From positions 186,001 to 250,000 of the forward strand of contig OU015567.1 of the NCBI GenBank assembly GCA_907165135.1: 64,000 nt of DNA, written 5' to 3'. This stretch comes from Oikopleura dioica (lineage: Eukaryota > Animalia > Chordata). A program made the translations under genes and the position numbers. The notes beneath the pieces were generated by a model. That model ran no database searches. It saw only the letters and a list, made by a program, of their open reading frames with translations, and had not been told where the DNA came from. Below are positions 10,270 through 59,700 of the stretch, one piece after another (position 1 is the first letter of the stretch; each line of letters opens with the position of its first letter).

Positions 10270-13200
10270 ATGTTAAAGCTGACGTGGTCTTCACGGGTTG
10301 TCAAGCTGATGTAATTAGGAGCCAACCAGGATGGGAAAATGTGAAGCTGGATACTGACGGAAGCGAATGCATTGCTGATCAGGCCCGAGGCGTGTCTATT
10401 TTCTCTAATTGGCACGATTATCGTAACGAAACGACAGGGAAATGGATGATTCCCTTCTACATCGAGGAAGAACATTACAATTCCGATGAAATTGAAAAGA
10501 TACGATCACATGCTCGTCAGTTCGAAAAGAATACTTGCATTCAGATGAAAGAACTCATTACTGCGGAGGATTTCGATTACTTCACAAACAGAATCAAAGT
10601 CTTTTCAAATCCAGCGGAATATAATTGCGCAAGCAAAATCGGTAAAATTGGAGGAACTCAGCCACTCTGGTTGCAACCAGATTGCATTAACGAAAAAGGG
10701 TACTCGGAGACAACCACAAACCACGAGTTTATGCACGCTTTGGGTTTCAAACATGAGCATAGCCGTCCGGATCGGGATGATTATGTTTACATTCATCCTG
10801 CAGTTATTGAAAAGGGTTAGAATTCCTATTAGTTACACCAAAATTTTTCATTTCTTCTTCATAAGTTTTCACTTTATCTGCGAGATCTTTCGAACTGAAA
10901 GCTAGGTTTCAAATCAAAAAAATGTATTAATACAGAGATGATACTTTTAAGACGCATCAGGTGCGAATAAGAAAATTCGACTGGAAAAAAATTGAGTGAC
11001 TGTTTAAAATTTCAGAAAACACTGACAAGAAATCCGATTTTTGCTTCCTTCCCCCTTAAAATATGAAAGAAGTTCTGAAATATTGAGGCCGGAAATAAGG
11101 TAAAAAATAAAAATAATGTTGGAGATATCGGAGAGTCAGAACGACCTTAAAATTTTTTTTGAAAATTTTGATAAAAAGTACTATTTTCGGCCCTCCGAAG
11201 GTACTTAAAAAACAAAATTTTGAGCCACCCTAATCATATGCCAGAAATCATATCCGATCACTCAAAGTTTGAAAGTAAACAGGTGTATTTTTTGAAAATC
11301 TTTTTCGAATTCACTCTTTCGTCTGAATGCGATCAGTTGATAAATTTAAAAGCAGTGCATTAACAATAGATAAAGTTTTTTTTTACCTGAAAACCTAACC
11401 CTGAGGTAGATAACGGCAATTATGCAAAAATGTTAACTTCTATCTGGACAAATACAAGCTCTCCTTACGATTTTAAGTCGATCATGCATTACGAGCCGGG
11501 CATGGTTAGTGATGGAAAATGGACAATTGGACTCCCCCCAGGCAAGAGTTCAAATATTTCTTAAAGTTTTTTCGCTCTATGATTGGAAACTCAGTTATCA
11601 GTATTTTTAATATATTATAAAGTATCTCGTTTATTGCAGAAACTTTTCGCCTTTTGGCATCATCAGTGCTTTAGAGACGCAAAGTTGTATCTCAGATACT
11701 CGAGATAATGTTTTAAATACTCGTCAATTTTGCGATATATTATAAAGTTCTTTAATGTCAGGAGCTCAAATGATAATGAACTCTTTCAAAGATGGCCAAG
11801 AGCGTGCTCCAGTTGAGCATGTTTATCCTTTTTCAGAGCAGGATATATATCAGATGATGATTTTCTATCCATGCGACGATGCTAATCGCTGTGATCCCAA
11901 TCCTTGTGGAGATGGGCAAACTTGCGTTCTCGACGCAACCAATCAGCCGATTTGCGAATGTCCGGAAGGATCGCTGCTGAATTCGGCCGGAACATGCCAA
12001 GTTGTGGCTTCAATGGCCGTCGATGATTTTTCAGATCTTGTGAATTACAAATTCATAAGACTTCGCCGTAGCCCCTCAGTCTCTCTTTACGACAACAACG
12101 GTCTTGTGATTGACCTTGCGAGTGCCGACGCAAGTGAAATCACAGTTCTTGCAGAAGTAGAAGAATGTGGAGAATCATTAACAGTTGATGAATGCCCTTT
12201 AGAAAAAAATTCCGCAATATTAAACGGAGAATCTGCGACGCTGAGCTCTCTGATATTTCTCAAGTCTGTCAATCAGCGACTCAGATTTTCTCTCCGAAAA
12301 AATGGAGTCAATTTCCTACCGGACATCTGGAGCATTTCCGGCGAGTTTGTGATTAAAGATGGACTGGAAGCAGCGCCGTGGAATATCACATGGACAGGCG
12401 ATCATTCAACGAAGTATTTTGGCGCGCCTCTAGAAATAACAGCATCTTTTACTTCTTACAGCGGAGAATCAATTGACTTAGGTCCAGGCGAAAGAGATAT
12501 ACAAGCGTGTCTTTGGCTCAATGAAGCTGGAACAAATGGATTAGTCATGGGCTCGGCAAACATATAAATAGCGCTAAATTTTCGTTAAGAATTTTTTTGC
12601 GTAATTTATTTAAAATGCCCAAAATTTTCCGTCTATTCGAGTCGTTATGATGAATTGACGAAGAGTTGATTCTGCTGTTCGTGGCGTATTGATTATTTTA
12701 ATTTGTTAAATCTGCTCTTAACCGCATATGATATGCGGCATATCGAATTTTGCGTAGGTCAAGCCTTTTAAGGCTGTTTTGGTTAAAATAAAATTTTGAG
12801 AAGCACACGATTGGAATTCTTCCAACTTCGAAAGATTCGAACCCGAACGATCCGGAAATAAAGAATATACGTTATTTATGTCCTTCTTCATGTCAATGGT
12901 CAATTTTTAAGAATTCTTAATTTATTCAAAGAATTGATTTTTGATGGAGCTGCCCGAAGCTAGATATGGGGGCAAACGTTAATGCCTCCCGAAAATTTTG
13001 CGCACGGCGCCCCGAACTCGGGGCAGAGCCCCTTTATCCTTGATTTTGTCCCATTTTTGTAGACAAAGAATTTCGACAACCCGACTTTATTGGGATCAAA
13101 TTTTACGTGCAAAATGATTTAACGTAGAAAAAAAAATTTTAAGGAAATTTTTGATTCTAGTATTGAGAAGAAAAGTCAACTTGGGCAAAAATACGTACAA

Positions 13201-15474
13201 ATATTTTGAGATTCTCTAATTTTCTGAATATAAACCTGCCCAAAATCTTATTTTGACGAAACCCTAAATATATACCTTAGAAACAAAAGAAAAGAATTTT
13301 CATATTTTTCCGATTTTCGATCCGCAAAACTCTTAAAATTGAAGCATCAGTTATTGTCTGATTTAAGTCGATTTTACTTTTAATATTATTTTTTTTTCTT
13401 TTCAAAATTGATAAAAGTGTCGAGGAGCCCCTGCTAAAGACTAAGTTTGATTTAAGATTAAAATTCTTTTGCGCTAGAACGGTTAAGATCTTGCCCCGAG
13501 TTCGGGGCGTTGTGCGCTTACCGAGATAAAGTTTTGTGCGCTCGCGCGTTAGAAGTCTTAAAAGATTCATATAGATTCTACTTAGCGAGTTATGCAGTTG
13601 CCGAGCTCAATATCAGCGCCGGTTGAACGCAAAGATCTTTTTTTATGAATGCAGAAACGCTGATCAATTCGGAAACTTCGATTTAGACAATATTACATTC
13701 TACTATACCGACGTGGACGATCACGTCGCCGTTCCTGCCGGCAACTATTTTTTAAGTCTTAGAATTGTCGCCTTCGACAGCTGGGGACCCGAGGATATGT
13801 TTTTTCTAGATGAAAATTATGGAGGGTCTGTTATGTCTTCTGGAATTTTCGAGCTAACTCTTTCTGACACTTGTGCGCAGGAATGTAACGCAAATGGATA
13901 TTGTCATCCGACAGCATCGACTTTCGGCACTCCATCTTGTGTCTGCAACGACGGTTACGAAGGCGACGGTGTCGATTACTGTATCGAGGTCATCGACGAA
14001 TGCACGAGCAATCCATGCCCTGCCGAACAAGAATGTCTGGACAAACTCTTTGGCTACGATTGCATTTGTGGATCAGGCTTTTATAAAGGCACAGCTAGGG
14101 TTTTTCAAGGAAAGTGTAATATCATTTAATTGGCCTCAAGATTTTAAAATTCGTGTAACTTGAGTCGCTTATTTCAAATACCAGAAGATTTTTCAGGGGT
14201 ACTGAATTGCTCCGCCCTGCGCCGCCTTGCACCGCCCAGCTTTCGGACCGGGCGGCGTTAGGCGGCGCAGGGCGGCTAAATCAGTACATTTTTGAATTCA
14301 AACGTAAAACAAATAAACGAGCCGTTCCGTGCAAACCCTAGGCACAGCTGATGATTGCCTTGATATTGATGAGTGCGCGGACAATCTTCATGTCTGTAGC
14401 GATGGAACTAGCTGTGAAAACACATTTGGCGGGTACTTCTGCAATGCAGACAACAATCAGCCAAGTTGCGACCCAAACTGCGATGCTGGCTTCTTTTGCG
14501 ATTCGGCAACGGAAACATGTGTTGACATAGACGAGTGCTCTGAGGGCACTCACGATTGCAAGGATTTCGAAAGCTGCAGAAATACAAACGGAAAATTCAT
14601 GTGTGATTTCGACAACAGTCAGTGTCGTGACGATTTACCGCGACCTGAATGGAAAGGGGTACGTTATTTATGCTTTTTATTTTTTTTTGAATCATTCTTG
14701 ATTTTCCAGAATGAAAGAAAGAAAATCTTTTTTTATAAATATCAAAATCAAAAATAAAAAAAAACCTTCTATTTTATTAAAATATATTATTGAATATTAT
14801 AATTTGGTTATTTGAAAAAATAAATGGCTTTAAACCTTTTTTTATTATTTCAGTGATTCTTGGATCAAAAAACTCTTAATGAGAATATTAATTGATATTC
14901 AATAGCGATCAGGAATGCGATACGTTTATCAATCCTCTAACGGCGCCGTGATGGGTATGAAGTTCAAGAACAAGTTCAAAACGGTCAACATCCGCAACGA
15001 ACTCTACACGGGCGTCATTATGTTCACCAAGACTGTCTGCGGAATGGACTTTCTTCGCGCCCTTCAAGATGGCAGAGTACGAATCGACCTCGTGGATTCA
15101 TCCCCTCTCTATCAGATGCATGATTTTCACTACAAAAATCAGCAGAAGTACTCGGCCATCGGTTTCACATTTGATCTTCTGAGCATCGAAACAAAAGATA
15201 TGCCCTGGTCTTTCAAGGTTCATTCAGTTTTTCTTTTCTCATCAAAAAAATAATAATTTATTAGTCTGGAATTCCAACCAAAAATATGGGCTCTGATGAC
15301 GTCTATATTTCCTTCACAGGTTTGGAACAAGTCAACTGGCTCACGAATCAGGAGAATTGCCTTCTTCTTGGCGCTCAGGCAGCTCTTCCTTACGACGATT
15401 TCGACGAAGTCGACAGAGCATGTTTCGTCGATTTGAAGACTTTCTGGAAAACGCCCCCTCTTCCGAATCCTTAA
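10270..15474 (+). CDS. Astacin (M12A) zinc metalloprotease with multiple EGF/calcium-binding EGF domains; 5' end uncertain
   Basis: HEFMHALGFKHEHSRPDRDDYV zinc motif (~10722). Met-turn YDFKSIMHY at ~11467. EGF repeats in exons ~11760-12550, ~13590-14088 and 14342-14658. Final exons ~14906-15218 and ~15265-15474. Confidence 0.88.
11624..11734 (-). mobile_element. 111-bp hammerhead-containing non-autonomous retro-insert with 14-bp TSD, in an astacin intron
   Basis: Direct repeat atatattataaagt at 11610-11623 and 11735-11748. Contains a hammerhead followed by AATAAA on the minus strand. A degenerate relative lies at ~18888-19025. Confidence 0.75.
11636..11669 (-). ncRNA. Minimal type-I hammerhead ribozyme (near-intact)
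   Basis: Minus strand reads GCA-CUGAUGA-U-GCC-AAAA-GGC-GAAA-AGUU-UC-UGC then AAUAAA. Core is intact, stems I and II pair, and stem III is one base from the palindrome AAGCUU. Confidence 0.75.
13000..13517. mobile_element. MITE with ~28-bp GC-rich TIRs in an astacin intron
   Basis: gcgcacggcgccccgaactcggggca ... tgccccgagttcggggcgttgtgcgc. The same TIR appears at ~44899. Confidence 0.65.
14096..14340. mobile_element. hAT-like MITE (TAGGGTTT TIR, 8-bp TSD GGCACAGC) inserted in coding sequence; predicted GC-AG intron 14089-14341
   Basis: ggcacagc|tagggttt...aaacccta|ggcacagc. Removing it restores CICGSGFYKGTADDCLDIDEC. Confidence 0.8.
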
Positions 15475-15532
15475 AAATCATATTCAAAAATCTTTTGTCA
15501 ATTATTCACTTTTATTATTTATCTGGTGTCGT

Positions 15533-15630
15533 TAGTTCTCTTTGCACTAGAGATGACATAAAAAACCCGTTATCGATATGCAATAAATTTAATATCGAAT
15601 CATTTACATCGATGTCATTAATCAAGATTT
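15533..15630 (+). repeat. Degenerate copy of the Penelope pLTR/hammerhead segment, just 3' of the astacin stop
   Basis: tagttctc..tgcact..gatg..ccg..tcgatatgcaataaa...catttacatcgatgtcattaatcaa aligns to the reverse complement of 58431-58525. The hammerhead core is destroyed. Confidence 0.7.
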
Positions 15631-16427
15631 CGATTTCCAAAAAATTTCATGATAAGCAATCACTGATTTCCAGTAAGGCAATTCTCATTTATGCGTAAAA
15701 GCTTTCACTATTGCCTTATCAAAGATCATCTACAGGACTCTATTTTCAGCGCGCCGTTTGAACTTTCAAAAGGTGAAAATGCTCGTTTTTGTCGTCGCAA
15801 CATTTTGAAAGGAAGAGCCAGTTGTCAAATTGTCCGACAAAGAGTCGGGGTCTCGACAATCCTTAAAAACAAAATTTACTTATAGACGACAAAAGTGACC
15901 AACTAAACAATTCTTGAGCGGAATCTTTGTTTAATAGAAGATTCATTGTGATATTGACTATGAAATCTTTGATCGAATATGATCTGAACTGTCCTTCAAG
16001 AAGAATATCATTGAAATAATTTGTTATTGACGAAATCTTATTATCTAAAAAATTATATACACCAAAAATTTACGCTAAAATTTTGTGTAAAAGAATTCGT
16101 TCCAAGTGTTAAAAATCTTTCCTTTATGCTTAGTTTAAGTTTAAACTCATACGGAAATTTTGCTTATCGAACTAAGCTGTCATTTTGTAGAACCTTGCAT
16201 TCAACAGTTGTACTGTTTTCAAAGTAGCCAATACTTTGAGCTTGCTGAGCTGAGCTGTCCTTCCCGAAAAATCATTGAGTTGGGTTGACTCTTCAAAAAA
16301 TTATTCAAATGATTTGAGCAAGGCAGTCCATATTGAAAAAATTGACCTGAGCTGAGGCACACAGCCTCTTCAGCTCACTAAGCTCAGAAAATTTGCAATT
16401 TTCAAAATCGGAGAGAGTAAACGAACA

Positions 16428-16818
16428 GAGTGGTCTCCCTTTTGCCCAAGTCGCCGTTTGACCAAGATCACTGTTTGCTCAAGTGGGGAAACGGTTAATC
16501 GGACAAATGGCGATAAGTTTAAATTCAAATTGATTGATCAGATGAATTTATTTTATGGGCGTCCCAATAATCAATCCTGACTTAACCATCTCCAATCCCT
16601 GCTTCAACAACTTGAATCCTTGCTTTTCAGACGTCGATCCTGGTGGCTCAAACATAACTGATGTCTAAAAGCCAAGATTGACATTGGAGAAGCCAAATAA
16701 TGTTTCAATCAATCATAATTAATTCATTCACATCGCCGTTTGTTCAAGATCTCCCTTTCCTGAAGTTGGGCGAACGGCGATTCGGGTAAACGGCGACTCG
16801 GGCAAACGGAAACCACTC
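16428..16818. mobile_element. MITE with GAGTGG termini and ~19-bp subterminal repeats
   Basis: gagtggtctcccttttgcccaagtcgccgtt ... aacggcgactcgggcaaacggaaaccactc. Confidence 0.65.
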
Positions 16819-17045
16819 GTCGGAACGTATAGAAAACAAATAAAAATGAAATTGAACTTCAAATGGACACTTTTTCAAAATTTACATATTTTTGGAAAAT
16901 TTTCGCTTTCGCTTTTCATTTTTGGCCAAAATCAAGACCCCTGATTGAAGGTTGATCTCGTGCCTTAAGATTTTTATTTCTCTGAAAGAAGATTGAGAAA
17001 GAAGACGATCTAGTTGTTACTCAAAAAATTTTTTCAAGTGATTTG

Positions 17046-18481: not shown

Positions 18482-19087
18482 TTAAGGGTAAAGCAGAAGA
18501 ATTGGTGGTAACCGACAAAGGCTAGGGTTAACCTTTGTCACAAAACCTTTGTGACCCTCCACTCGCCGGGACTCTGTCTACATATTTTAACGGCGAGTCG
18601 AGCTTCTCCCGTAAAATACGGGTCTGCTCAAAATAGCCAGCTGTCAAAATTGATCTCACCAGGCCTTAAAAGCGACCTTTTTCGCTTTAAACTCATAGTT
18701 TCTTTTTTCTATCTTTGACATCACTTGCAATGATTTTCAAAGATGAAACAAAGACGAATCGGAGTCAAGACAAGCAACAAAAAGTTCAGGTAAAGTTTTT
18801 CGAAGAAAAAAAGGGTACAAAATTTATGAAGCTTGTTTCAGAAATGTCTTTTTCTTATAAGTAGAACGTCCATTTTTTATATTTTCTTGTTTATTGCAGA
18901 AGCCTTTTGCCTAACGAATTTAAGAGTGTTATAGGAATAATAAAACAGACAGAAAACTTTGACAATCATATGATATGATTCATATCAAAAATAGAATTAC
19001 CTTTAGAGATGCGAAGTTGTATCTGACAATTAAGAATCCACCAGAAACGGTCATTTTTCTTTTAATCTTCTTAATTGTGCCCCTTAA

Positions 19088-30400: not shown

Positions 30401-32296
30401 AGGCGGCGAAGCGATTTTTTTAACCCTCAATTTCAGATCTGGCAGTTCGTCCCTCAATCTGATCATTCTTCGCTCGGAACAGGTAGATTATTAATCTAAG
30501 ATTAAAGGAATAGCTTTAAATCTTGGGTTCTTTAATTGCTCCCCTGACTAAGTTTTTTTTTCAGTTTCTAAAATCATTCTGCAGCATTCACATCAAAGCC
30601 AACCTCCCTCGCCCCTGGCTGCCCGACCACTTTCTCTGGTTGGTCTCAAACGACCATCGCTGGTCGACAGTCAAGAACTACGCCCAATGCGTCAAGATAC
30701 AACCAACGAGGACAAGCTAGCTTACGATCTCTCCGAGCGAGTCTGTCAAATTATGCAAACGGCTGTTCCTTCGCTTAGAGCGAGAAAAATTGCCACGCTT
30801 TGCCAAAGAGCTAAATCCATCCCGGAGGTGAGTTTTTTTTTTTATAAAATTCTCATATAAGCTGAAATTGATAAATACTGGATGCTATAAAAAACTATTG
30901 TAAAAACTGAAAATAAGCAAGCCAATTAAATGAACTCCGCTCAATTTGTTTTTCGCAAAACTCCGCGTTCCAACGCGTTTTTTTGCGATATTTGATGATG
31001 ATTGAATTAGGCAGCAATTTCCCGATTTCCGCCAATTTAGTGTTTTGTTTTTGAAAATTCAGCTTGTTTACATAATTCTAGCGCGTCATTAAACAACGAT
31101 CCTGCGCCGCCGCACTTCTGACCAGAGTAGACTCGAATTTGGTTCTTTCGCTCGAAACTCTTCGTGAATGGAGGTAACATCAGGACCTTCTCTCTCTTTT
31201 CCTTTTGCCCCCTATGTTTGAAGAGTTTTAAGTACAACACTTTTGTATTCGTCATTAAAATTCGAACTTTTCGGGTTTTTTTCGCAAAATTTTTCCAATT
31301 TTTCCGCTGGTAAGCGATTCCCTTTATCAAAGTAAACCCCTCAAAAATATCATAAAGTTTCTTCGCCAGAGGTCCAAGCTTACTTTCGAGCATAAGTTAT
31401 GCGGCATAACTAAATAATTTCATTTAAGGTCATCCGAATGATACCCTCGTTTGGAAAAGTCTGAACTTAAAACTTACGAAATGACACCCTTAAGAGCATC
31501 TAGTAGTGAGCGAGCAATTTTTATTTCCTTAAAGACCCCCCCTCAGCTTTTTTCGAAAAATCTATTTTCGGAATTTTAAAATTTTGACCCCGGAAATGGA
31601 TTCTAAGGGTGAAAAAACGATTTTGAGGCTTCATTTTTTGGCGGTCTATCTCGACTCTAACACCCTCGAAATCGCCTTTGAAAATTGGGCATTTTGCGAA
31701 AAATTGACCAAGTTCCCATAATTTTGGCAAAAATATTGAATTTTCCTGGTCATATATTCGTATTATCAAATTTCTGAATAAACTTTAACCTAAGGACGCA
31801 TTATTAAAAAAAGATTACGGGGGGTCCTTAAAAAATTTTCTTGCTATAGTATCGACAAAAAAATTTTTGAAAAATCAATGTTGTTTTAGTAATTTCAAGA
31901 TGTTAAAACTAATTTTGAAAAATAACACAAAAGCAAGTCGATTTGGTTATGTCTCCATTTTACGGTTAATTTCTAAAAAGCGATAACCAATTAGTCGGGT
32001 TATTTGGGCAACTTGTTCTTTTACAAAATAGTATTTATATTCAAATAGGCGCTGCTTCATAACCCACGTGGATCAACGTTTATTTTTGATTGCAATTTGA
32101 AAAGTTATTTTCAATTTTGTAATTACAAATTTCTAGAGACAAAATGATGGCCATAAACGCGCAGCGAAATGAGGATTGCGAGAACAACGAAGATTTGGAC
32201 GGAACGATCGGCCGTTTTTACAGCTCCATGACAAGAAAAATCACGAAGGCGCAAAGAAAGCCGAGAAAATCGAAATCGAGAGGAAAGAAAAACTGA
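30401..32296 (+). pseudogene. 5'-truncated, frameshifted duplicate of the 5900-8367 gene
   Basis: High nucleotide similarity to 6322-8575, including introns. Lacks exon 1 and most of exon 2. One-base deletion gtcgaagat>gtcaagat at ~30693. Confidence 0.8.
31533..31827. mobile_element. GGACCCCC-family MITE, TTAA TSD
   Basis: ttaa|agaccccc...ggggtcc|ttaa. Paralogous empty site at 7903-7906. Confidence 0.85.
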
Positions 32297-32563
32297 AAGC
32301 TTCAAAAACATCAATTGACGATTTTTTCTTCAAAAAATATTTGAAAAGCGATACCTTGACTAAAATAATTTTCGAAACAATTTTTTTTTGTTTAAAAATT
32401 TTGTATATTTTTAAAATTAACTATTTATCTGACGCTATTGATATAACCTTACTGTACAAAACTCTCATATTTACTGTGAAAGGGATATCTCAATAAATGA
32501 TTACAAATAAATTTACAAAGATAAAATACAAATTTGAGGCAAAAGTTTTATAGACAAAAATAT

Positions 32564-35500: not shown

Positions 35501-36848
35501 GGCGAGTAAAGAGGCATTTTCAACTCGTTGAAGCTGGTCTTTTCTCAGACAAACATCAATCAAGTCCTGGCATCGAGAAAAAATAGTTTCTGGTTCATGT
35601 TGATTCGCTAACAAATAAAAATAAGAAAAAACAATGAATGTTTTTGTACCTTCATAAATATTGAAAAGAGTTTTGATATGTTCTTCGTTTTTGTCCAAAA
35701 AAGGATGAGTCAAATAAGCAGTTTGGTAAATAACCACCCCCATCGCCCAAATATCCCTCGCAAAAGTCAGCTGATCGCCCTTGTTTCTATTAATCACCTC
35801 TGGAGGCAGATAATATTCAGTTCCGACGATTTCAAGAAGATTCGTTGTCGTCATACCGGACGCAACTGCCTCGTCATCTTTTAAGTGATTTTTTTTAAGA
35901 TTCCTTTCGAAAATTTCTCGTGTTTTTTTTATCTCATTTTATTTGGCAGAGACTGGTTTCGGAGTAAAACTCCTTCTTCAGGCTACAGATCAATAAACAG
36001 TTAACCCAGAAATATGATGTTACCTTGAGAAGCGAAAAAGCGCGTCTGAGTTAGAGCGAGATTACAAACGAGATAAAAGCGCGTAACAGAAAATGACAAA
36101 AAGGGGCGCCAAGATCTTGGCTCTTACTCAGACGCGCTTTTTCGCTTCTCAAGGTAACATCATATTTCTGGGTAAACTGTTTATTGATCTGTAGCCTGAA
36201 GATGGAGTTTTACTCCGAAACTAGTCGCTGCCAAATAAAATGAGATAACGACAAGGTCAACTAGAGAATTATCTAATTTTTCATAAATCATTCCTGAAAT
36301 ACCGAAATCGCCCACAACCACCCTCATTCTCTCTCCGATAAAAACATTTGAAGGTTTAATATCTCTGTGCAGAATTTCTTTCGAATGAATGTAGCTTATT
36401 CCATTCACAAACTGGCAAATTATCTGAAGAGCTTGATTTTCAGCCCAATTTTCGGGATTTTCCGCTTTTCTTTCGATGAACGAGCCAAGATCACCTAAAA
36501 AAATATTTTTTTTCCTAAATCTTTTTCAAAATATCACCAGCGGTCATGAATTCCATCGTGATCGCGAAATAGCGAATATCTTCGTTGCTGAACGAAAATC
36601 CTTCAAAAACTTTTAAAATGTTCCGGTGATCGAGAGTTTTCATGATTTTGAATTCTTCTTCCGCATCTTTGGCATTTACAAGTCCTTTGAGACAAACCTG
36701 CTTTCTTTCTGAATAATAATTTCAAATTTCGCCTTTTTTTGTTTAAAAAACCGTAAATATCTTCGACGATCCAAAAAAGCTTCGTTTGATCATTCGATTC
36801 TCGAATATTTCTCAAAAAATTATATTTTTCATTAATTTCAATCGCCAT
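32564..36848 (-). CDS. Ser/Thr protein kinase (NEK-like), coiled coil, then three tandem ~150-aa repeat domains
   Basis: ITMEF, YIHSKEILHRDIKPSN, VGDFGIS, VGTEYYLPPE and DIWAMGVVIY kinase motifs. Coiled coil at 35087-35400. Repeats contain TTWYLYITNC, GSSKFRAIAENI and GYIRWNIQ. Confidence 0.85.
33558..34239. mobile_element. Kolobok-like MITE (GGGTACCT TIR, TTAA TSD) abutting a splice acceptor
   Basis: ttaa|gggtacctaggtcgag...ctcgacccaggtaccc|ttaa. The paralogous repeat intron at ~34890 is empty. Confidence 0.9.
35946..35986 (-). ncRNA. Degenerate hammerhead copy (sense to kinase pre-mRNA)
   Basis: GUAGC-CUGAAGA-A-GGAGU-UUU-ACUCC-GAAA-CCAG-UC-UCUGC. The stem III palindrome is broken and the first stem I pair is mismatched. 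Confidence 0.6.
36191..36231 (+). ncRNA. Minimal type-I hammerhead ribozyme (intact, GUC cleavage site)
   Basis: GUAGC-CUGAAGA-U-GGAGU-UUU-ACUCC-GAAA-CUAG-UC-GCUGC. Core is intact, stems I and II have 5 bp each, and stem III is the palindrome ACUAGU. AATAAA follows. Confidence 0.85.
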
Positions 36849-42471: not shown

Positions 42472-43145
42472 TGATGATTTCAAAAAAAATTTCGCGGGCC
42501 CGGAAATCGTCAAAAAACTTCTTGTCTATTTTTGTAGAGCTCGTCGAGACGAGTCGAATGATATATAAAACTCCAGATAGTTTTAAGATTTTCCGCCAAA
42601 AAAGTGATAAGAAGGTGTCTTATCAAAAATTTTCTGACCAGCGCCGTTTCTGTTCTAGAAAAGCTCAGGTGATGCTTGACCCCGGAAAATGATGCTCATG
42701 GTCTGTTCTATTCCGGCAAAAAATTTCAGCTCGTCCTCACATATCCTGCTGTGCTTATCAGCGAAAATCAAAAAATTAGTGCATTTTGTTGTCGCTGCAC
42801 GTTCCTAGTTTCCGGCCCATTTACAGTCCCATTTTCCTTGGAAAATGAAATTTTACGATAAACTCGGCTGGGTATACGATGACGAGCTGAATTTTTTTGC
42901 CGGAATAGAACAGGCCATGAGGATCATTTTCCGGGGTCAAGCATCACCCCAGCTTTTCTAGAACAAAAACGGCGCCGGTCAGAAAATTTTTGATAAGACA
43001 CCTTCTTATCACTTTTTTTGGCGGAAAATTTTATAACTATCAGGAGTTTTATATATCATTCGACTCGTCTCGACGAGCTCTACAAAACTAGACAAGAAGT
43101 TTTTTGACGATTTCCGGGCCCGCGAAATTTTTTTTAAAATCATCC
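42472..43145. mobile_element. Foldback-type element with ~270-bp inverted arms
   Basis: ~42472-42740 is the reverse complement of ~42875-43145. A single partial arm lies at ~44603-44800. Confidence 0.8.
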
Positions 43146-46500: not shown

Positions 46501-49500
46501 TGTGCATGTTTTAACGACGAAGCTGGTGTCCGGAATTGAAGCTGGGGCTTTTATCTTTCAAGAGTTACTCACTTTTCCCGAAGTTTTATGACCTATCTCG
46601 AGCACGAGCATATTTTTAGAGCTTGTCTTGATTGAAAGACATTGTAAATAGACATTTTGAAAAAAAAATTATTTTTATCTGGCTGTTTAATGATAGTCAC
46701 TGATAGTAAGGGAAACTTTCGAGATGATTCTGCATGCAGAAAAGTTAAGCATATAAGAAAAAATAATCTTTTAACGAAGGAAGCGCGAGAGTAGAGAAAG
46801 TTGGCAACCTTCAGAAATGAGTTCCCTACCAGAATTTGCGCGAAGGGGCCGTTTGTCACTAGATAAAGATCGTTTTTCCGGCACTATGTAGAATGCCGAT
46901 GAAAGATGGGGTTGCCCTGGACTTGAGCCCGAATTAGCGACACCATGTGTGCGTGTTTCGCTTTTTCATTAAGCGGAGGAACCCGCCAGGTGGAAGACTT
47001 CGCTTTTACGAAAAGAACATCCTCTCACTGAACTAATGAATTTTTGGATTTTTTCAGGTGAGCCCCTAAATTTAAAAATCAATATATGGAGATAATCTTT
47101 TTTTTTCCGGGCAATACTTAACTTTCATCGGTAGTTCTATATTTTGCAGAATTCTTTATTTGCAGAATTGTTCTGCATTCTGCAGAAAATTTTTGCGGAA
47201 CGGGGGGAGTTCTTATGAAAAAATTTGCTAAAATTGTTATTCATAGTGCATTATTGAAGAAATTTTTGCTGTTTTTATCAATTTTACGTTGAAAAGGAAA
47301 AATCATTTTCAAATGAACCCCTTAAGGATATAAGCTATGAATTTGAACTTTCGTAGCGCCTAAATGCGACATAGGATCATTTTCATTTCAAAAGCAGTCC
47401 TACCTAAAATTGCACGTAGAACTCAAATCTGGAACTTTTGAAAAAAATTTATGGAAAATTTTCTCTCTAGAGCGATTTCAAATCTTACGCTCTCGATTGC
47501 TCGAAATTTTTCCACTAAATCGGTCGAGTTTTTTCGATAAATAACTTCTCTTAACCCTTATCTACGAAATTGACGGATCAGTTTTCGATAATTCCGACCG
47601 AAACCGATTTTCGAGCCATTTACATGAGGCTTACCCAGCGTGTGAATAGTGTAAAAGCGGCGCGCTGGGCGCTCGCTCTCTCAACTCCTCTTTTCCGTGA
47701 GAGTGGCGCGGTTGAGCGTAGCGCTTTGATTGGTTGCCCGCGACAAAGCACAAAAAGAAGAAAAACTCGAGCAAGAAAGAGGAAAACGCTAGAATGAAAA
47801 TTTGAGAGAGTTTGGAAATAAAAGCCCGTCAATTTTCTAGCTTAACATCATCAAAATAAAAGAAACGGTTTAATTTTAGCGATTCAATGGAAAAATTCGA
47901 GCAATCGAGAGCGTAAGATTTGAAATCGCTCTAGAGAGAAAATTTTCCAAAAATTTTTTTTCAAAAGTTCCAGATTTGAGTTCTAAGTGCAATTTTAGGT
48001 AGGACTGCTTTTGAAATGAAAATGATTCTACGTCGCATTTAGGCGCTACGAAAATTCAAATTCATAGCTTATATCCTTAACCCGTTGCCGAGCGCGTAGC
48101 ATTTAGGATGCTACAACCTGCCCCAGGGCTCGAAATCCAGCTTACTATTGGCGTAGATGGCTTTTATACACTTCGCGCTCGGCAACGGGTTAATATATCT
48201 TTATTTTTTCTTCTGATGCCCTCGATATCAACCTAAGCTATATTGAGAGTTTTTAAAAATTTTTGATTGTTGAGGTCATCTCAGAAATATCGATGTTTGA
48301 AACTTGAACGTATTGTTGCGACACCCTTAAGAAGCGCACGAGCGTGCATTTTCTTCTAGTCCCCTAGACCAACTATCGGGCTACCCAAAAGCAAAAAGTT
48401 TTCGGAAATCTTAAGGGGATCACCTCGAAATCACTGTTTGAAAAAGTTATTCCCACATGACAAAGGAGGATAGGAGCACATTAAATAAATAATTTTCCAT
48501 CAAGTCCCCACTTATTATGAGTAGAATCTTTGATCAAATATTTTTATAGTTAGAACTCAAGGGCTGTCCATAAAGAGTGCTTCCGACTTGTAATTTCATC
48601 GTAGTAAAATCGACTTCGTTTTCATATTTTGAGGTATCATAGAAAGAAATCGGAACATCGAACTCGATGAGCTCATTATTAACATCGCCAGCATTGAACG
48701 TGAGAGAAGTAACAGCGTTGCTTTGGTCGGGTTGCTATTGCCATCAGAAAAAGTAGGGCAAAAAGATAACTGGAAGTTCAATTTGAGCAACTTTCTTTCG
48801 CAAATTTTTTTTTGGTTCAATTTTGTCAAAAAATAAATTATCAAAAAGTGAGTAGTCTTATATAGTCTATTGTATTATATTATATAATTTTATATATATA
48901 GAGAGGCATAACGCACAGAAAAATCAATTTTTTCCCTGTAATAGATACAAGTTTGAAAATTTGGGAGCAACTAAAACACCAAAAATGAAATTTTTGAAAT
49001 TTTTTTTGTTGAAATGTTGTCAGAGCACAAAAATCTATCTGATAGGTGAAAATTCGCTTCTTAAGGACCCCCCCCCCCGTCAACAATTTTCGAAAAATCA
49101 AATTTCGAAATTTTTTTAATTTTGACCCCGGAAATGGATTCTACGGGTCAAAAAACGATTTTGAGGCTTTTTTTGGGGTCTATCTCGACTCTAACATCCT
49201 CAAAATCGCGATTGAAAATTGGACTTTTTCACGAAAAATGATGAAAATGGCCTATTTTTGCTAGAAAATCAGGTTTTTCTTGGTCAAAAATTGCTCCGAA
49301 CAAGTTAATATGATGTTTTAAACTTCCAGGAATACTCAGAAGCCAAAATATGGCTGTTTTAAAATTTTCGATTTTTTGAGGAAAATTGTTGACGGGGGTC
49401 CTTAAGACTTACAGATAAAAAGTCGATTTTTGTGCGTTATGCCTATATATAGATAATATAGAATTTTAATATATTATTTACTATAAATATAATATAATGA

Positions 49501-50863: not shown

Positions 50864-50965
50864 AGACAACTTATTTACTAATCAAATCACAATCAATAAA
50901 ACTCATATGGATGTGGTTCATCTTTGGAATCCCCGGAATCGTCAACTTTACGTTGTAAAAATATA

Positions 50966-51606
50966 TAAGACAGATCTTTAAATCTAGGCCTGAAGGACAC
51001 TCTCACTATTTACAAACAACGTATATTTTGGATTCTATTTATTTAATCTGTATACAAAAATTTATCTTCCCATTTTAATTCTAGCGTAGGAAGTGTGGGG
51101 CGGTTTGGCGAAAATGCGAATTCCAAAGTTTTCAAAAAAGGCCCCTACGTTTTTTTTATCAACGTCATTTAACGATAGAGTTAATTATTAGCTCTAAATT
51201 AATCACTTAATTAAAGCTCAAAGTAAGCCTGAGCAATAACTATACCCATAATGAAGCATTTCGCGGAAAATCGTGCAGGTCATTATCATTAGTTCTATCG
51301 GTAAGGATTTTCAAAGGGCTTCATTTGTTATTGAAAAGATTTTTTCGATAGAAATTATCAGGGGGTTTTGGCGCTAGAGAGCCTCCAAGAAACACCAATT
51401 GTCAAAAATCGTGATTTTGCGTCATTTTTGAACACGATTTTTTCTATGAAAATACAGTGAAACCCTTACCTAAGGCCCAGCAACTTAAGGCCCCTTTTTA
51501 AAAAAAATAAATTTTTGTTTACAGATTAAATAAATAAAATCCAAAATATACGTTGTTTGTAAATAATGAGAGTGTCCTTCAGGCCTAGATTTAAAGATCT
51601 ATCTTA
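50966..51606. mobile_element. Element with ~85-bp TIRs
   Basis: agatctttaaatctaggcctgaaggacac...ctgta versus tacagattaaataaa...ggcctagatttaaagatct. Confidence 0.75.
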
Positions 51607-52409
51607 GATCTTACTATTGACAAGAGCTTTTTAAAAAATTCCTTCATTTTTGCCATGTAAAGACCCCTCAAAATTGGCATCTCGGACTGTTTTTATGTAC
51701 GTAAAATGATTTTTAAAAAATGTAATTCGTTGTTGTTATGAGCGCCGGTCAAAAATGCCTAATTTCGGATAAATCGTTGAGGACCCTCTCAAGGTTTGTT
51801 ACCTAATGATTCTGTTGAATTATTTTATGTGGCATCCCAATGAGCAATAAGTCTAGGACTTTCTATTGAACTATCTCTTTTAGATAAATTTCAGTTTTTT
51901 AATTCCAACTTACTAAATAAATATCTGAATTCTGATCTGCCGAAAAAAATTATTTTTAATTAAACATATCAAATTTTTATAATCGTAGAAAATAAATATG
52001 TCTTGAATAAATTTTTAACCGGAATCTGAATATTTTCTTCATCAATCTCTTGCTGCCTTGCTCAAAAATGCTAAACGTTCTTTTTAATTTAATGCTCTTT
52101 TGGTGGTGGTGTACGGGCTGTCAAGCAAGTTAACTTTTCAAACCTCGGGCGATTTAAATAAAGCGAATTTTGTTAAGAAGCTCGCTGAGTGAGTGGCGCT
52201 CGAGAGCTTTTCCTCTGAAAACTGATAAAAGTTCATTTCTTCTTCTATAAAAAGTCTTACACGTTGCTTAAGAACTTGAAGTGTACAGAAGAGCCCGTCG
52301 AATTATTGAGATTTTTGACTTTCAATCGACTAATTTGTTAAGATTTATGAATGCTCAAGGGGCTTCGTGATAAGGCATTTCGAGAAAAGGTTTCGAAAAA
52401 GATTAATGT

Positions 52410-53620
52410 TTATTTTAATGACAGAAAAAACGAGGCGGAAATCGAAGTCAAAAATGACCGAGTCAAGATAAAGGGGAAACTAAGGTTGTATTTTTGTGAT
52501 TTCATAAATTTTCTGAAAAGAGACCATCTTCGAACATCATTCGCTGAATTGTTTGTATCATCTCGAAAGCATGAACATAAATTCCGTCTATAAAAATTTA
52601 AGAAAAATAATTTTTCAGTAAATATAAAAAGGACCTAAAAATACCTTTTCTAATGATAGTTTTCTCCAGGCATCTTTTCGTTGATGCGCATCTTTTTTGC
52701 TCTCTTTATATTGCGGATCGGATATGATCGAGAATTATTTTCAATAAATTCTTCATCTTCTTGATCTTGCTCCAACTCTTCTAATTCACGTCTTTTTCAA
52801 GAATTTTATCCTCTCTAGGAACTTCAAAGTCAAAAAGCATAACGTCATTATCCCGGGATAGATCAAAATTATTTGGTTTTCTGGTTGATGAAATAAGCGA
52901 TGATTCTTGATTCTTTGAGAGTATCATCATTTTTGATCTCGTCGATGTTGACATCGTTGTTGAAGTTGTCGTTTTTGATGGTTCACTTGATCTTGTTGTG
53001 TTTTGCGTTGTGGATTTTGTCGTTTTTGGTTTGGGAGTCGTCGACTCGATCTCTTCCGTCTTCCACTTGCATCCGGTGAAGACATTGAATGGTCCCACAT
53101 TTGTATGACAGTAACACGTCCTTTTAAAGGCATAAAGATCTCTTATTTATAATCCAAAATCAGGCGTAAACCTTTTCCTTTGATATTCTTTTGTCTCGGA
53201 TTCGCTGAAACTCCGCGCAAAAGCAGTGCAGCTGGAAAATTCAGAAATACCATTAGGACAGTTCCATTCCCCACAAATCCGTGAAGAATCGCTTTCATTG
53301 CAAAAGAACTCTTTCTTTTCAGAGCATTGGTCACGTGATTCGACGAATACGTCATAGCCATTGTATGACGCTTTTGGCGAATTTTCTTTTCCTTGAACTG
53401 AATCAGAAATTAAATTACAGATCCATCAGACTGGTTTATTATTCAAATTATCTTTTTAAATAAATTGTGGAATTTTAAGCCTTGACTGAATTTACAAATA
53501 ATTTTTGCATAAATTCTGCCATGAAAAACCAAAGGAGCAGTTTTTTTATTTAAGACTATCATCCGTATCTCGTAAAAGCTTACCTTGAACAGCAAGAGAA
53601 AACAAAGCAAACAAAAACAT
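52410..53620 (-). CDS. Small secreted protein with a Cys-containing N-terminus and a Thr/Ser-rich mucin-like segment; 3' exons uncertain
   Basis: MFLFALFSLAVQ signal; RDQCSEKKEFFCNESDSSRICGEWNCPN; TCYCHTN..GCKW; STTPKPKTTKSTT. Confidence 0.5.
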
Positions 53621-54479
53621 GATTTTGTTCTTTATTAACCGATTTCCTCTTTGACGAAAACAGGAAATGAGCTTGATAGCGTTTGACAACGCAATTTAAA
53701 TTGAGCTGCTTTGTTTATCTACAAACCAACGAAATTAGGTTTCAGGAGGAATTTTCAAAAAGACCAATCAAAACAAACTCAATTTATCCGCATTAAAAGG
53801 TTTTAAGATTAAAAATCAATTTGTCACTGATTCAGAAGGGATAATTTCCGGAGCGAATATTTACAATTTTTTGTTATTAAAGCGCCTGGAATCGACAAAA
53901 ATCAAGACACGAAAACACCGAATTGCAAATTTACCATGGTCTATGGTCCAATTTGTATATTCAGATAACTGAAGAAGAATACTCATTTCACCCACCAAAA
54001 ATGCGAGTGTGCGCTCCGCGCCTGTTTGCGGGTGCCCTCCTTGTGCCGGGAAAAACCTTGAAATCCCGGCACACGGAGGGTCAAATCCCAAACGTTCTAG
54101 AAATCCCCTGTTTCCGTCTTTTTAAAGGTTATGTAAAAGGTTTTCTTTAATGTTTGGTCAGGGAAGAGAACGATAAAATACTGGCGATGCTCTTCTAAGT
54201 AAAAATTCAAAGTATTTATCAATCATATATTTGGATAGGAGTGCTGCGAGTTTTTATCCATGAAATTAGTTTTATCATCTGTTTTTGACTCTTTTGTCGG
54301 CCAAGCAGATTATTTATCTTTTTGACCGTATTCTTCTTTTATTTGGGTTAGGGTTAGGCAAAAAAAAATTAAAAGACTGTCTTGAATTTTATTATTCGAT
54401 TAGTTTTTCTTCAAAAACACTCGATTTGAAGAGTTTCTTGGTCAAAAATCAATGGCTTTTTGGGATCTCTAGAACGCCA

Positions 54480-55080
54480 CTTTAGTTTTTTTCAGAAACT
54501 GTCTTAGGTAGACCCTTAATTTCAATTGCATCCTTTTGACGAAACCCTCGACTACACCCGTTTGATTAATAATGAATTTTCGATATCAAACTTAAGGTTA
54601 TACAGACCGTTAAAGGTAAGGTTGGAAAATGAAGGTTTTTCGAGGTTTTAATGAGGGTACAATCTTTATTTTTTCCAGGTTAAAAATAAGGCCCTGAGCT
54701 TTAATAATTACCCTTTTGACAGTTTTTGCTAAATGAATTTAAGAAGGTCAGCCCCTTTAAAAATTTATAAGGCGAAAATAAAGCAAAATTTTAGACTGTC
54801 ATTTTAGAGTTTCCTGCCTTGAATCATTTTTTTTTTGACAATTTGTATGAAAGAAATGCATTAAATAATAAGAATTCCCTCAATTTTCATTAAAAAAGAG
54901 CAAATCAAAGATTTTCAGAAAAAAATGAAACGCAAATTTCCCATTCATAAAGCCAATCTTAACTTAATTTTCTAAAGCAGCAAAAATTGTGTAGGTAAAA
55001 GTCTTTCTTTGTTGTCTAAAGAACCAAAAAGCCAACAAATAATAAAAATTTTGACATTATCCATCTTGATGGGGGGGGTC
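54480..55080. mobile_element. Diverged inverted relative of the 6428-7080 MITE
   Basis: Ends ccatcttgatggggggggtc. Internal reverse-complement similarity to 6430-7030. Confidence 0.6.
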
Positions 55081-55804
55081 TTTTCCGAGGTTAACTTCAA
55101 ATTCAAAAAGCATTTTGACTTCCGTGAATAATCAAAATTCTACTTCTTAATCAGGTTTCTTCGCTATTTTGCTCACTTAGACTCTTAATTTTGACGACCT
55201 CCTCCTTCATTAGCACTGATTAATCTCATTTTCATTCCTTCTTTGGAAAATTATATTTCGCGGTTTCGATTTAAACAAAGACTCTTTCAGTGTCCAAAAT
55301 CATTAAATTAAATATAAAAGCATAAAAACAAAACTTGTAGAAAGATCCAATAGCGGTTTAAAGTTTTTAGGTCGGAGGAAGTTACCTGCAACCGCTTTAT
55401 GATTGCAAATGCTTAATTATTTGCTTAATTTATACTGCATTACAATTTTTGGCCATTTTTTGGCGCTGAAGAGCAATTGAATACCAAAAAACCGCCAAAA
55501 ATCGCTTCAAAAAGTATAAGAACTAGGAAATTTTCGTTCGCAAATCAGATTATGCTGGTTCTTCCAGAATAATAAGTTCAGGGTCACAACTTTCTTCTAC
55601 AGTTAAAAGCTTTAAAATTAAAAAGCCAACAAAAAAGAAGATACCATTTCAAAAGGGCCTAAATGGCCATTTTTGCCAACCTCAATCACTTTGACGGTCT
55701 CTTATGCATAAGCCAATGGCGAGAAAGAGAGCTTATTCAATCAGAATATCTTTATTTAAAAATGAGCTTCCCCAGGGGTAAACCAAAATAAGTAAGTCTT
55801 AAGC

Positions 55805-56219
55805 TAGGACGTGACAGCAAAGGAGCGAACAAGAAAGTTTCATACACAAAAGGATGAAATAAGAAAGTATCATACATTAAAGTATCAAATAAGAAAGTAT
55901 CATACACGAAAGGATCAAATTATAACGGAAGATCCAAGCCAGTACTTTGCAAGATTGGATCGGGCATACATTTGAAAATGATTGAGGATGGGTTTCTTAT
56001 AGGCCGGTAGGCCTTATACGGCAATCTTATTGGTTCCAAAAAAATTTGATCCTTTAATGCTTGATACTATTTAATTTGGTACTTTCATGTATGATACTTT
56101 CTTATTTGATCCTTTCGTGTATGATACTTTCATGTTTGATACTTTAATGTATGATACTTTTTTATTTGATCTTTTCGTGTATGATACTTTCTTGTTCGCT
56201 CCTTCGCTGTCACGTCCTA
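55805..56219. mobile_element. MITE with TAGGACGTGACAGC TIRs and ~29-bp subterminal tandem repeats
   Basis: taggacgtgacagcaaaggagcgaacaagaaag ... ctttcttgttcgctccttcgctgtcacgtccta. Confidence 0.8.
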
Positions 56220-56768
56220 TCTTATTACTTCCTTATTTTAGTTTGTGCCCTTCCCCATGAGCGCTTGATCAGCCTCGTACGTAAGACCAACAAAAAAAGA
56301 TACGGGTTTAAGTTTCAGAAATCGGGGAGGGGGGGATCCCTTGCTGGAAATTCTAATTTGCTGGAAAAGCTAACGGCTGGAAAAGCTAATGGCTGGAAAA
56401 GCTCCCGTCTCCCTTAAAAATGGGCAAAAAGAAGCAAAGTTTCCTTCAAAAGAAATTATCGAAATCCTTAGTTGATGCTGAGAAATTAAATTTACATTGA
56501 TTGATCTCATTAAAATATTCCCCCTTATGATCGGTTTTCGTGGTTTTTTAAAGTAAACATTGCTGTCTTATATAAATTGCGATGGTAACGGACATCTCCT
56601 TCATTTCCGGTTTTTTGTCACAAGTGAATTTCCGGACACAAAAAATTTCGGAAGTAAAAATAATCCTTTTTGGTCTCGAACAGGTGTAAGTTAAAAAAAA
56701 ATCGTCAAATTTTTCAACAAAAAATCAGAAAGATTTACTCAGCTCATTTATACCAATTTTCGAAGAAA

Positions 56769-59700
56769 ATGAAGATTTTTATTTTTCAATTGCTGTGTCT
56801 TTCCGTAAAAGCTTCCGGAAGCTACAATCTATCAAATGACCCCAAGCCCGAGATAAGTCTCCAAGCGTTGAACGATAAAACAGATATCATTCCCGACGAA
56901 CTAAACTGTTCTCTGTCCAATGGACAATTTCTGAATGCTGGTAAGCGTCATTCACGTTTTCAACAAGTTGAATCATTACGATTTGCACTAATTCATATTT
57001 CTGTATGTTTAGCCGACTGGGTTTGCCGGAACTTAAATCGATCAATCAAGCGTCTTCAACCAGAGATCCCTGAATGTGAGCAATAATGATTCAAACGCCA
57101 TTTTAGGCTAAAAAAGTCGAGATAAACCCAACTAAAAATTTTGAAATTCCGAAAATAAATTTTTCAGAAAGTATTGACGGGGGGGGGGGGTTATTAAAAT
57201 TCAAAAAAAGTTTGTTGTCCTAGATTTTTCGGAAATATTAAGGAAAAGAATTTTAAGCGATTGCTGAATATGTTTGCAGTCCGCTCCCTCCTCTTTTAAA
57301 CGGTGAAATTTTCTGTTTCGACGAATGGAAGATCGGAACCGTTTGCATGGGTGTTTGCAAAAATGGATGGATTCTCGGTAAATATAATAATTTTTCATTC
57401 AATAAAATCAATGAGATTTGCCTTAACTCGATAAGGATATTTTGACAGTTTGTTATTGAAGAGCCTCATAAACGAAAAAAACGATGCTTACCGACGAGAA
57501 ATCGGAAAGAAAGGAGGACAGAAGAGAGTCCCGTCAAATGGAATTTTGCTAAATCAAATTTTAAATGCGTCAAAGATTACCAGGGTAAGCGAGAAAAAAA
57601 GTAATTTCTTTCTTAAAATATTCAATAAGAATCACCTTGCTCAAATAACAAGGGAGGCTGCTCTCACGAATGCATCGACAAAGGAGACATGATTCCGATC
57701 TGCGTTTGTCCCTGCGGGCATACTCTCGCGAACGACGGAAAAACCTGCATTGATGAGCGAAAGTGTCCACTAGATATTTCGCTTTGGCTTGATGGAACGA
57801 CTTCAGCATGCGCAAAAGACGGATTCAATCACGCTCAAAAAACTATGATGGCGAATTTGGTCGGCTTTTTGGATCATGAGGTTCGTAAGAAATTCAAAAA
57901 TAACAAGTGATTGTCTTTCGTTCATACTTTGGTATTCAGTCTCATAACTTCGACGCGAAAATCTTCGCCGCGTCCTACGGTGACGGTCAAGTCCAACAGA
58001 ACGCCTCTCATTTTGTAACGCCTCTTCTTCATGAAATTCAAGAGTTTCTTGATGCTCTGACAATTTCATGCGCAAACAATTCGATTGCAGACGTCTTTCA
58101 AAAAGTAAATAAGATAATGATTAAATTTATCGCCTAAAAATTCCTTTTTTCTTCAGAGACGTGATCAAGCATTTGATTCTACAACAGTCTCCGTTATCAC
58201 CCTTGCTGCCGAGTTGTTGGACCCGTCAGAACTGATAAAAATGAACCGACCGAGAACAGATACAACGATTGTCATAGTTGACAGACAAAGGGCAACGAAA
58301 CAAGCACTGATCCAAGCTTCTATTCTTGCCTGCAATCATGAAAATACCCAAAGATGCGAAAATATTTTCAACCTTAACGAAGGTAAATTATGATAATTTA
58401 TAAAATTTTAATAATTTAATAATTTTAAATAATGTTGATAAATGACATCGGTGTAAATGAGTTTGATGTGAAGTTTTATTGCATATCGATTTCGGCTTTA
58501 AGCCATCGTCAGTGCAGAGAACTAGAACAAGTGGAAATAAAATCCAAACGCAACTCCTTACCGTCTTGGGATTGAGGACGAACTAAAATTCCTTTCAGCA
58601 AAAAACTGACTAACAATAGTATTCTAGAGAAATTATAAACGAAAGATATTTTTGATTTTTCAGAGGCACCTTTTGCGCATTTATCCTTCTCGAAATTTTA
58701 CGATGAGAATTCCTTACACAGGTCATCGAGTTTCGAAAATAACTCAGGGCTTACGAAAACTCATCAAATCTTTTATTCCGAATTTTAATCTACACTTTCC
58801 CCACAAGACACTCACTGTTCGAAACACTTTGATCTCGCACTTGATGCCCAAAATTGAACAGACTAATTCGCTAAACTCAGTTTATCTTTTTACTTGTTAT
58901 TGTAATAATCAGTATGTTGGGGAGACGGAAAATTTGAATCAACGCTGTCAGGATCATCAACAGCCTTCAAAACAAACAGCGATTTATACACACACTTCTG
59001 AATGCCAACTTTATCAGACTAAATTTGCAGAGTTTAGTCAGACAAATAATTTCGAGTCTCGGTTTAATTTTCTTCGTAATAGAATTGAAATTTTACATTC
59101 GAATTTAGATTATAGAACCCGTGTTCAGACAGAACCAATCGAAATAAGACTCAGACGTCCACGGCTGAATCGACAAGTCCAACATAAATCCCTAGTGATT
59201 ATTTAATGTTAACCATTCAGAGGCTTCTATAAATGCGCAAAAGGTGCCTCTGAAAAATCAAAAATATCTTTCGTTTATAATTTCTCTAGAATACTATTGT
59301 TAGTCAGTTTTTTGCTGAAAGGAATTTTAGTTCGTCCTCAATCCCAAGACGGTAAGGAGTTGCGTTTGGATTTTATTTCCACTTGTTCTAGTTCTCTGCA
59401 CTAACGATGGCTTAAAGCCGAAATCGATATGCAATAAAACTTCACATCAAACTCATTTTAAATAATATATAATAAATATATATAATATTAAATTATAAGA
59501 TAACATTTTGTTTTTCGGGTTTCAAACAAAAATAAAATCATTTAAGTGTTATCTCCCGGAGAAATCTTAAACCGTGTGAGCCGTGAGTCTTGCTTCAGCA
59601 GAAATTATATGTCAACAATTTCATGCGGCGATTTCTTCATGGAGCTGGATGTGCCTATCTGTTCGTTAAGAGGACTTCAACAAGAAGATTTGATTTTAAA

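What the first reader, a model, noticed from the sequence alone, without database searches (positions are those of the whole stretch)
11624..59458. Dispersed hammerhead-ribozyme retro-inserts whose intact ribozymes all lie antisense to the host gene
Seen in sequence: three distinct minimal type-I hammerhead families, each with CUGANGA, stem II, GAAA, a (near-)palindromic stem III and UH, followed within a few bases by AAUAAA. Intact copies are at 11636-11669(-), 36191-36231(+) and 58480-58516(-), each antisense to its host intron (astacin +, kinase -, ZP gene +). The sense-oriented copies are each damaged: 59397-59433 has CUGA>CUAA, 35946-35986 has broken stem I/III pairing, and ~15543-15583 has an eroded core. 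Established: minimal hammerheads with palindromic stem III are characteristic of Penelope-like element pLTRs and cleave as dimers. Inference: a family of Penelope-mobilised ribozyme inserts colonises introns here, and selection disables only the copy that would cut host pre-mRNA. The sample is small (two paired arms plus two singletons).
Basis: partly seen in the sequence, partly recalled or inferred. Interest (0 to 1): 0.85.

Follow-up and report, generated by a model that had tools for sequence, protein, structure and literature searches.

The report
Penelope retroelement ribozymes in host introns
The small self-cutting RNA motifs are real, but they are the ordinary ends of recently jumped Penelope-type retrotransposons, and elsewhere in the same genome intact copies sit in gene introns on the strand that is transcribed, so the proposed rule that selection disables only those copies does not hold.

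Summary
The motifs are real. Three intact minimal type-I hammerheads (0 in 30 shuffles) and the damaged copies lie where stated, in an Oikopleura dioica (Okinawa-size) genome. They are pseudo-LTR ends of 5'-truncated Penelope-like elements with an inverted arm: a GIY-YIG ORF lies between the arms at 58.5-59.5 kb, and about 290 such cores and several 820-850-codon ORFs occur genome-wide. In this window all three intronic insertions do have a damaged or missing sense ribozyme. Outside it the rule fails: seven intact sense ribozymes sit in introns (HPD, RING, hydrolase, SIL1-like and three more genes) against at most one damaged; differences between arms fall in ribozymes no more often than chance (7 vs 8.2 expected); and the window also holds a decayed antisense copy. 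The 15.5-kb copy lies after a stop codon, not in an intron. Most likely the sense arm is harmless: it is a weak dimer-dependent ribozyme and is buried in a long hairpin with its own antisense arm, which is always transcribed first. A weak bias in older or unpaired copies is not excluded. The scan noted similar intronic pairs in this genome before.

The parts
11624..11734 (.). 111-bp Penelope-like insertion in astacin-gene intron 11542-11761, bounded by a 14-bp target-site duplication (11610-11623, 11735-11748); copied from spliced element RNA (lacks the pLTR intron)
11636..11669 (-). Minimal hammerhead, antisense to host; core intact, palindrome drifted to AAGUUU; AAUAAA at 11635-11630
11692..11734 (+). 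Remnant of the sense arm: first bases and tail only; ribozyme and AAUAAA absent (later deletion or truncation at insertion)
   Evidence: interpretation inferred
10863..10910 (-).
   Evidence: loose read ends, sequence
15533..15611 (+). Old pLTR end, about 80% like the TCGA family, core eroded; lies ~70 nt after stop codon 15472-15474; its AAUAAA (15582-15587) is the only AAUAAA/AUUAAA within 1 kb after the stop
18877..19025 (-). Old decayed pLTR end of the AGCT family, no confident host gene
35929..36057 (-). Sense arm in kinase intron; hammerhead 35946-35986 with broken palindrome and first stem-I pair
36120..36248 (+). Antisense arm; intact hammerhead 36191-36231 and AAUAAA; carries two derived neutral changes
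58455..58684 (-). Inverted pLTR arm, antisense to ZP-domain gene; intact hammerhead 58480-58516
58652..59206 (+). 3' end of Penelope-like ORF: GIY-YIG endonuclease (PF01541, E 6.7e-6), 49% identical to the endonuclease of a full-length copy
59229..59458 (+). 3' pLTR, sense to host; 40-nt spliceosomal intron 59352-59391, hammerhead 59397-59433 with G5>A at 59403, AAUAAA intact, short tail

Best explanation
The motifs are the pLTR ribozymes of young Penelope-like retrotransposons (RT + C-terminal GIY-YIG). Each pLTR end reads: short exon, ~40-50-nt spliceosomal intron, minimal hammerhead, AAUAAA, tail (shown). Insertions are mostly 5'-truncated and often carry an inverted copy of the pLTR, so one ribozyme lies on each strand, pointing outward (shown). 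In a host intron the sense ribozyme is close to neutral: it is a weak ribozyme that needs a partner or the element's protein (literature), and because the arms point outward the antisense arm is always transcribed first and pairs with the sense arm, hiding ribozyme, splice sites and AAUAAA in one long hairpin (geometry shown, folding predicted, effect inferred). After insertion both arms decay by drift; the three damaged sense arms in this window are mostly a chance cluster (inferred).
For: GIY-YIG between arms; 77 endonuclease matches, five with 820-850-codon frames beside ribozyme triplets or pairs; RVT_1 in relatives; 337 pattern hits vs 49 control, about 58 inverted pairs with both cores matching outside contig C3 (hand count). 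Intact sense ribozymes in introns: HPD, exons match residues 96-163 and 176-233 on either side; RING domain split across the insert; hydrolase, thyroglobulin-repeat, SIL1/HspBP1-like, coiled-coil genes; an unpaired sense copy in a GH20 gene intron. Arm differences in 20 pairs: 7 of 45 in ribozymes, 8.2 expected. Pooled sense 7 intact/4 damaged vs antisense 10/2, Fisher p 0.37. 34-37 of 34-40 ribozyme bases pair with the other arm in the folded introns. Low activity, dimers: PMC4209133; protein-assisted and dispensable for insertion in vitro: PMC11167929.
Against: All three intronic insertions in the window have the sense ribozyme damaged or missing, and the one mismatch in 230 nt is a core base. 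The intact sense examples are all very young (0-2 differences in most), so selection has had little time and some may be unfixed. Pairs were found through intact cores, which under-samples core damage. Only 8-9 outside sites could be oriented; four of the seven rest on a self-trained gene model.
Confidence: 0.72

Rival explanations
1. Weak orientation selection exists but acts on the whole sense arm (3' splice site plus AAUAAA, a ready-made terminal exon) and mostly on unpaired or old copies; ribozyme damage is incidental. This is the known antisense bias of intronic retroelements.
For: pLTR carries a real intron (exact intron-less copies in three families) and AAUAAA next to the ribozyme; at 11624-11734 the missing part includes AAUAAA; solid unpaired intronic copies are 3 antisense to 1 sense.
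Against: AAUAAA is intact in the sense arms at 35.9 and 59.4 kb; an unpaired sense copy with AAUAAA persists in a GH20 intron; sample too small.
Confidence: 0.13
2. One reading: sense ribozymes cut host RNA often enough that point changes in them are favoured over time, most plausibly where no antisense arm masks them (e.g. the 3'-end copy at 15.5 kb).
For: 3 of 3 in-window intronic sense arms damaged; G5>A as sole change; both derived changes of the kinase sense arm hit stems; at 15.5 kb 4 of ~11 core bases changed while AAUAAA is kept; one more tentative case (L046).
Against: Seven intact sense copies in introns; damaged antisense copies (10863 in window, L033, L056); no enrichment of changes in ribozymes; single minimal hammerheads showed no cleavage in vitro (PMC4209133); selection usually removes a harmful new insertion rather than waiting for a rescuing change.
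Confidence: 0.12
3. The single G5>A difference at 59403 is an assembly error or a heterozygous site, not a fixed change.
For: The assembly paper estimates 1.3% read-to-assembly disagreement (PMC8008620); near-perfect inverted repeats are hard to polish.
Against: Ten of 20 other pairs show no arm differences at all, so errors in arms are rare.
Confidence: 0.03

Closest known systems
Minimal hammerheads of metazoan Penelope-like elements (Cervera and de la Pena 2014, PMC4209133; Lunse et al. 2017, cited in PMC6765202)
   Same: Type I, extra base between 9 and 10.1, G10.1-C11.1 pair, palindromic stem III, short stem I, located in pLTRs, many families per genome, dual copies 100-700 bp apart on opposite strands, pLTR intron ending at helix I as in Drosophila virilis
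   Different: Stem II shorter (3-6 bp vs 7-8 in Schistosoma); tunicate families; AAUAAA adjacency not mentioned in the passages I read
Canonical EN+ PLE insertion structure (Craig et al. 2021, PMC8557442; Schostak et al. 2008, PMC2377424)
   Same: 5' truncation, partial tandems, inverted 5' copy, optional 30-40-bp tail, C-terminal GIY-YIG
   Different: None found; the Okinawa assembly paper calls PLEs 'almost absent' (PMC8008620), which the genome search contradicts
Non-LTR retrozymes (bioRxiv 10.64898/2026.07.22.740005)
   Same: PLE-derived, ribozyme-bearing, reported depleted in introns and exons
   Different: Retrozymes are head-to-tail non-coding arrays; these are inverted, truncated copies of coding elements
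Antisense bias and poly(A)-signal donation by retroelements (e.g. 10.1101/2020.11.30.405357, abstract only)
   Same: Possible for the 15.5-kb copy and for unpaired arms
   Different: Not shown here; no ribozyme needed

Membership tests
Minimal type-I hammerhead ribozyme (PLE type) | Core CUGANGA...GAAA...UH with stem II and stem I | tested here: met
   covarying stems across families
Minimal type-I hammerhead ribozyme (PLE type) | Palindromic stem III allowing dimers; unpaired base 5' of stem II | tested here: met
Minimal type-I hammerhead ribozyme (PLE type) | Self-cleavage as dimer | not testable with these tools
   no bench data; RNA runs were from another lineage
Penelope-like element, EN+ canonical | C-terminal GIY-YIG endonuclease | tested here: met
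   PF01541 at 58652-59203; 49% to full-length relative
Penelope-like element, EN+ canonical | Single ORF with RT upstream of EN | tested here: met
   in genomic relatives only (RVT_1; 820-850-codon frames); window copies are truncated
Penelope-like element, EN+ canonical | pLTRs, direct or inverted, with hammerhead, and optional tail | tested here: met
Penelope-like element, EN+ canonical | Spliceosomal intron retained in some copies | tested here: met
   GT..AG intron before stem I with exact intron-less copies in three families
Penelope-like element, EN+ canonical | RT phylogeny (Penelope/Poseidon, Neptune or Nematis clade) | not tested
   no tree built
Non-LTR retrozyme | Head-to-tail non-coding monomers bounded by ribozymes | tested here: not met
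   arms are inverted; coding remnant between them
   seven intact sense copies

The most novel reading that the evidence does not exclude
Young inverted insertions are tolerated because they mask themselves, but once masking is lost (old, unpaired or 3'-UTR copies) host selection specifically removes the ribozyme's catalytic bases on the transcribed strand, in one case keeping the adjacent AAUAAA as the host's poly(A) signal (15582-15587). That would be population-genetic evidence that minimal Penelope hammerheads cut RNA in vivo, which is an open question.
Probability: 0.15. Interest if true: 0.65.

Novelty: new member of a known kind. Interest (0 to 1): 0.27.

Why it matters
As it stands: a compact chordate genome reported to be almost free of Penelope-like elements holds many young families that the ribozyme motif finds easily, which is a useful annotation fix. 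The genome is also a good place to ask whether these weak ribozymes act in vivo, since it has about 130 insertion sites in gene-dense DNA with built-in sense/antisense controls. The striking claim (strand-specific disabling) would matter for that question but is not supported by the sites tested.

Tried and rejected
Rfam scan: no hammerhead hit, only chance miRNA hairpins. RNA reads on 10200-16100: four runs laid 2-44 repeat-derived reads each, no exon coverage; they come from a diverged lineage, so introns, 3' ends and cleavage could not be seen. Exonic insertion in the kinase: the empty site is an open frame, but homologs need a 14-residue spacer, so an intron is preferred. MITE/DNA transposon: rejected by the endonuclease remnant, spliced copies and tails. 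Lunse et al. 2017 could not be read. Marine metagenome copies lie at contig ends and could not be oriented. Sites L055, L066, L040 look intergenic and were not counted as intronic.

Full report
Source. The window is G000:C5:186001-250000 of a 64,281,565-base, 19-contig genome. That matches the Okinawan Oikopleura dioica assembly OKI2018_I69, 64.3 Mbp in 19 scaffolds (PMC8008620); the identification is an inference from size and gene style.

Observation. A hammerhead descriptor finds three intact motifs (C3 at 11666 -, 36196 +, 58512 -) and, allowing one mismatch, 59401 +; 30 local Markov shuffles give none. All have one extra base before stem II, a palindromic stem III and AAUAAA 3-7 nt after the cut site. 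Rfam does not see them. The arms 58455-58684/59229-59458 differ at one base, G5>A at 59403. The arms 35929-36057/36120-36248 differ at five sites; by family consensus the two damaging changes (palindrome, stem I) are in the - arm and two neutral ones in the + arm. Host genes: astacin/EGF (+), kinase (-), ZP-domain (+). Introns 11542-11761 and 58383-59546 join exons in frame. For the kinase, removing the element leaves an open frame, but four close homologs have 14 residues between DFGIS and the P+1 loop against 58 unspliced, so a GA-AG intron of about 36293-35878 is the better reading. So the three intact copies are antisense in introns, as stated.

Corrections. The 15543-15583 copy lies after a stop codon at 15472-15474 and is not intronic; its AAUAAA is the only one within 1 kb of the stop. 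The 11636-11669 copy is not pristine (two changes from its family, one in the palindrome) and not a singleton: a 14-bp target duplication bounds 11624-11734, and the sense arm is reduced to its first bases and tail. The window also holds a core-deleted antisense copy at about 10863-10910 in another astacin intron and an old copy at 18877-19025.

What it is. Between the arms at 58.5-59.5 kb lies a GIY-YIG ORF (PF01541, E 6.7e-6), 49% identical to the endonuclease of a full-length element on C1. The genome has 77 endonuclease matches, five in frames of 821-850 codons next to ribozymes, and relatives carry RVT_1. A core pattern gives 337 hits against 49 for the reversed control. By hand count, outside contig C3 about 58 sites have matching cores on both strands in outward-pointing pairs or triplets and about 69 are single. 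The pLTR end has a fixed order: short exon, a 40-50-nt GT..AG intron ending at or near stem I, ribozyme, AAUAAA, tail; exact intron-less copies exist in three families, including the 11624 insert, which shows passage through spliced RNA. All of this is described: minimal hammerheads in pLTRs, dual copies on opposite strands and the intron ending at helix I (PMC4209133); inverted truncated arms and tails (PMC8557442; PMC2377424). The same ribozyme-AAUAAA order turns up in many unrelated families in metagenome contigs (the pattern required it, so this shows spread, not enrichment). The assembly paper calls PLEs 'almost absent' here, which is an under-annotation.

Test of the orientation claim. 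I fetched 80 loci chosen by ribozyme sequence alone, removed the elements and ran a self-trained gene finder on the empty sites. Intact sense ribozymes with intact AAUAAA or stems sit in introns of: HPD (flanking exons match human residues 96-163 and 176-233; same family as the 11636 copy), a RING gene whose zinc finger is split by the intron, an alpha/beta hydrolase, a SIL1/HspBP1-like gene, a thyroglobulin-repeat gene and a coiled-coil gene (model only), plus an unpaired sense copy in a GH20 gene. Against these seven, one tentative damaged sense copy (L046); antisense: seven intact, one damaged (L033). Pooled with the window, sense 7 intact/4 damaged vs antisense 10/2, p 0.37. In 20 pairs, 7 of 45 arm differences fall in ribozymes, 8.2 expected from length (biased low because pairs were found through intact cores). 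At such rates a few of 60 pairs will have one core hit by drift. Limits: the sample is small and mostly one chromosome; the intact sense cases are very young.

How it most likely works. For the element, the ribozyme probably processes tandem transcripts; genomic copies extend past the cut site, so uncleaved RNA is the template, as found in vitro for an Anolis element whose ribozyme needs the element's protein and is dispensable for insertion (PMC11167929). For the host, a sense arm offers one weak monomer; single minimal hammerheads did not cleave in vitro (PMC4209133). The outward geometry means that on either host strand the antisense arm is made first; folding the three introns buries 34-37 ribozyme bases and AAUAAA in the arm-arm helix. 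Masking was suggested by an earlier scan note (s1-331796) and computed here; its effect in cells is inferred. Hence near-neutral decay of both arms (0.72). Rivals: selection on the sense arm's splice site and AAUAAA (0.13); slow selection on the ribozyme itself, best argued at 15.5 kb where no mask exists and cleavage would cut between stop codon and poly(A) signal (0.12); G5>A as an assembly artefact (0.03).

Verdict. Real motifs, correct family, known kind; the headline rule is not supported beyond this window. New member of a known kind, interest 0.27.

Noticed in passing
L034/L035, L067-L069, L055, L066: Four ribozyme families lack the downstream AAUAAA but carry one inside stem II, 11-13 nt before the cut site; about 16 families with a downstream AAUAAA have none there. 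Probably one clade, so one event; hints that the signal is functional and tied to the ribozyme.
   Followed up: partly
window 15582-15587: AAUAAA of an old Penelope end is the only such hexamer within 1 kb after the host stop codon; may serve as the host poly(A) signal.
   Followed up: partly
G000 C4:8248754, C4:4740202, C4:12376937, C5:15854063, C5:624134: Endonuclease matches inside open frames of 821-850 codons beside ribozymes: apparently intact Penelope-like elements in a genome reported to have almost none.
   Followed up: partly
G000 C5:534799 and C5:537802: Another asymmetric pair (one arm G12>A); host strand could not be determined.
   Followed up: no
window 35878-36293: The kinase intron without the element is an open reading frame in phase with both exons; intron retention or an older exonic origin is possible.
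   Followed up: partly
L033-L079, spliced copies L051, L064, L013, L023: Splicing of the pLTR intron keeps stem I intact in the AGCT families because the exon ends in the same base as the intron.
   Followed up: partly
G000 C3: Contig C3 (about 2.9 Mb, probably the Y-specific region) has the highest density of these elements, many older.
   Followed up: no
window 7255-8581 and 30694-32503: A 93-98% identical repeat of about 1.3-1.8 kb, 23.5-23.9 kb apart; many MITE-like inverted repeats also present (e.g. 42473-43144, 47322-48080, 50960-51612, 55780-56244).
   Followed up: no
L089, L127, L128, L131, L151, L158, L160, L197: Marine metagenome contigs hold the same AGCT-type ribozyme ends, including both-intact inverted pairs, in Oikopleura-like gene context.
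   Followed up: partly
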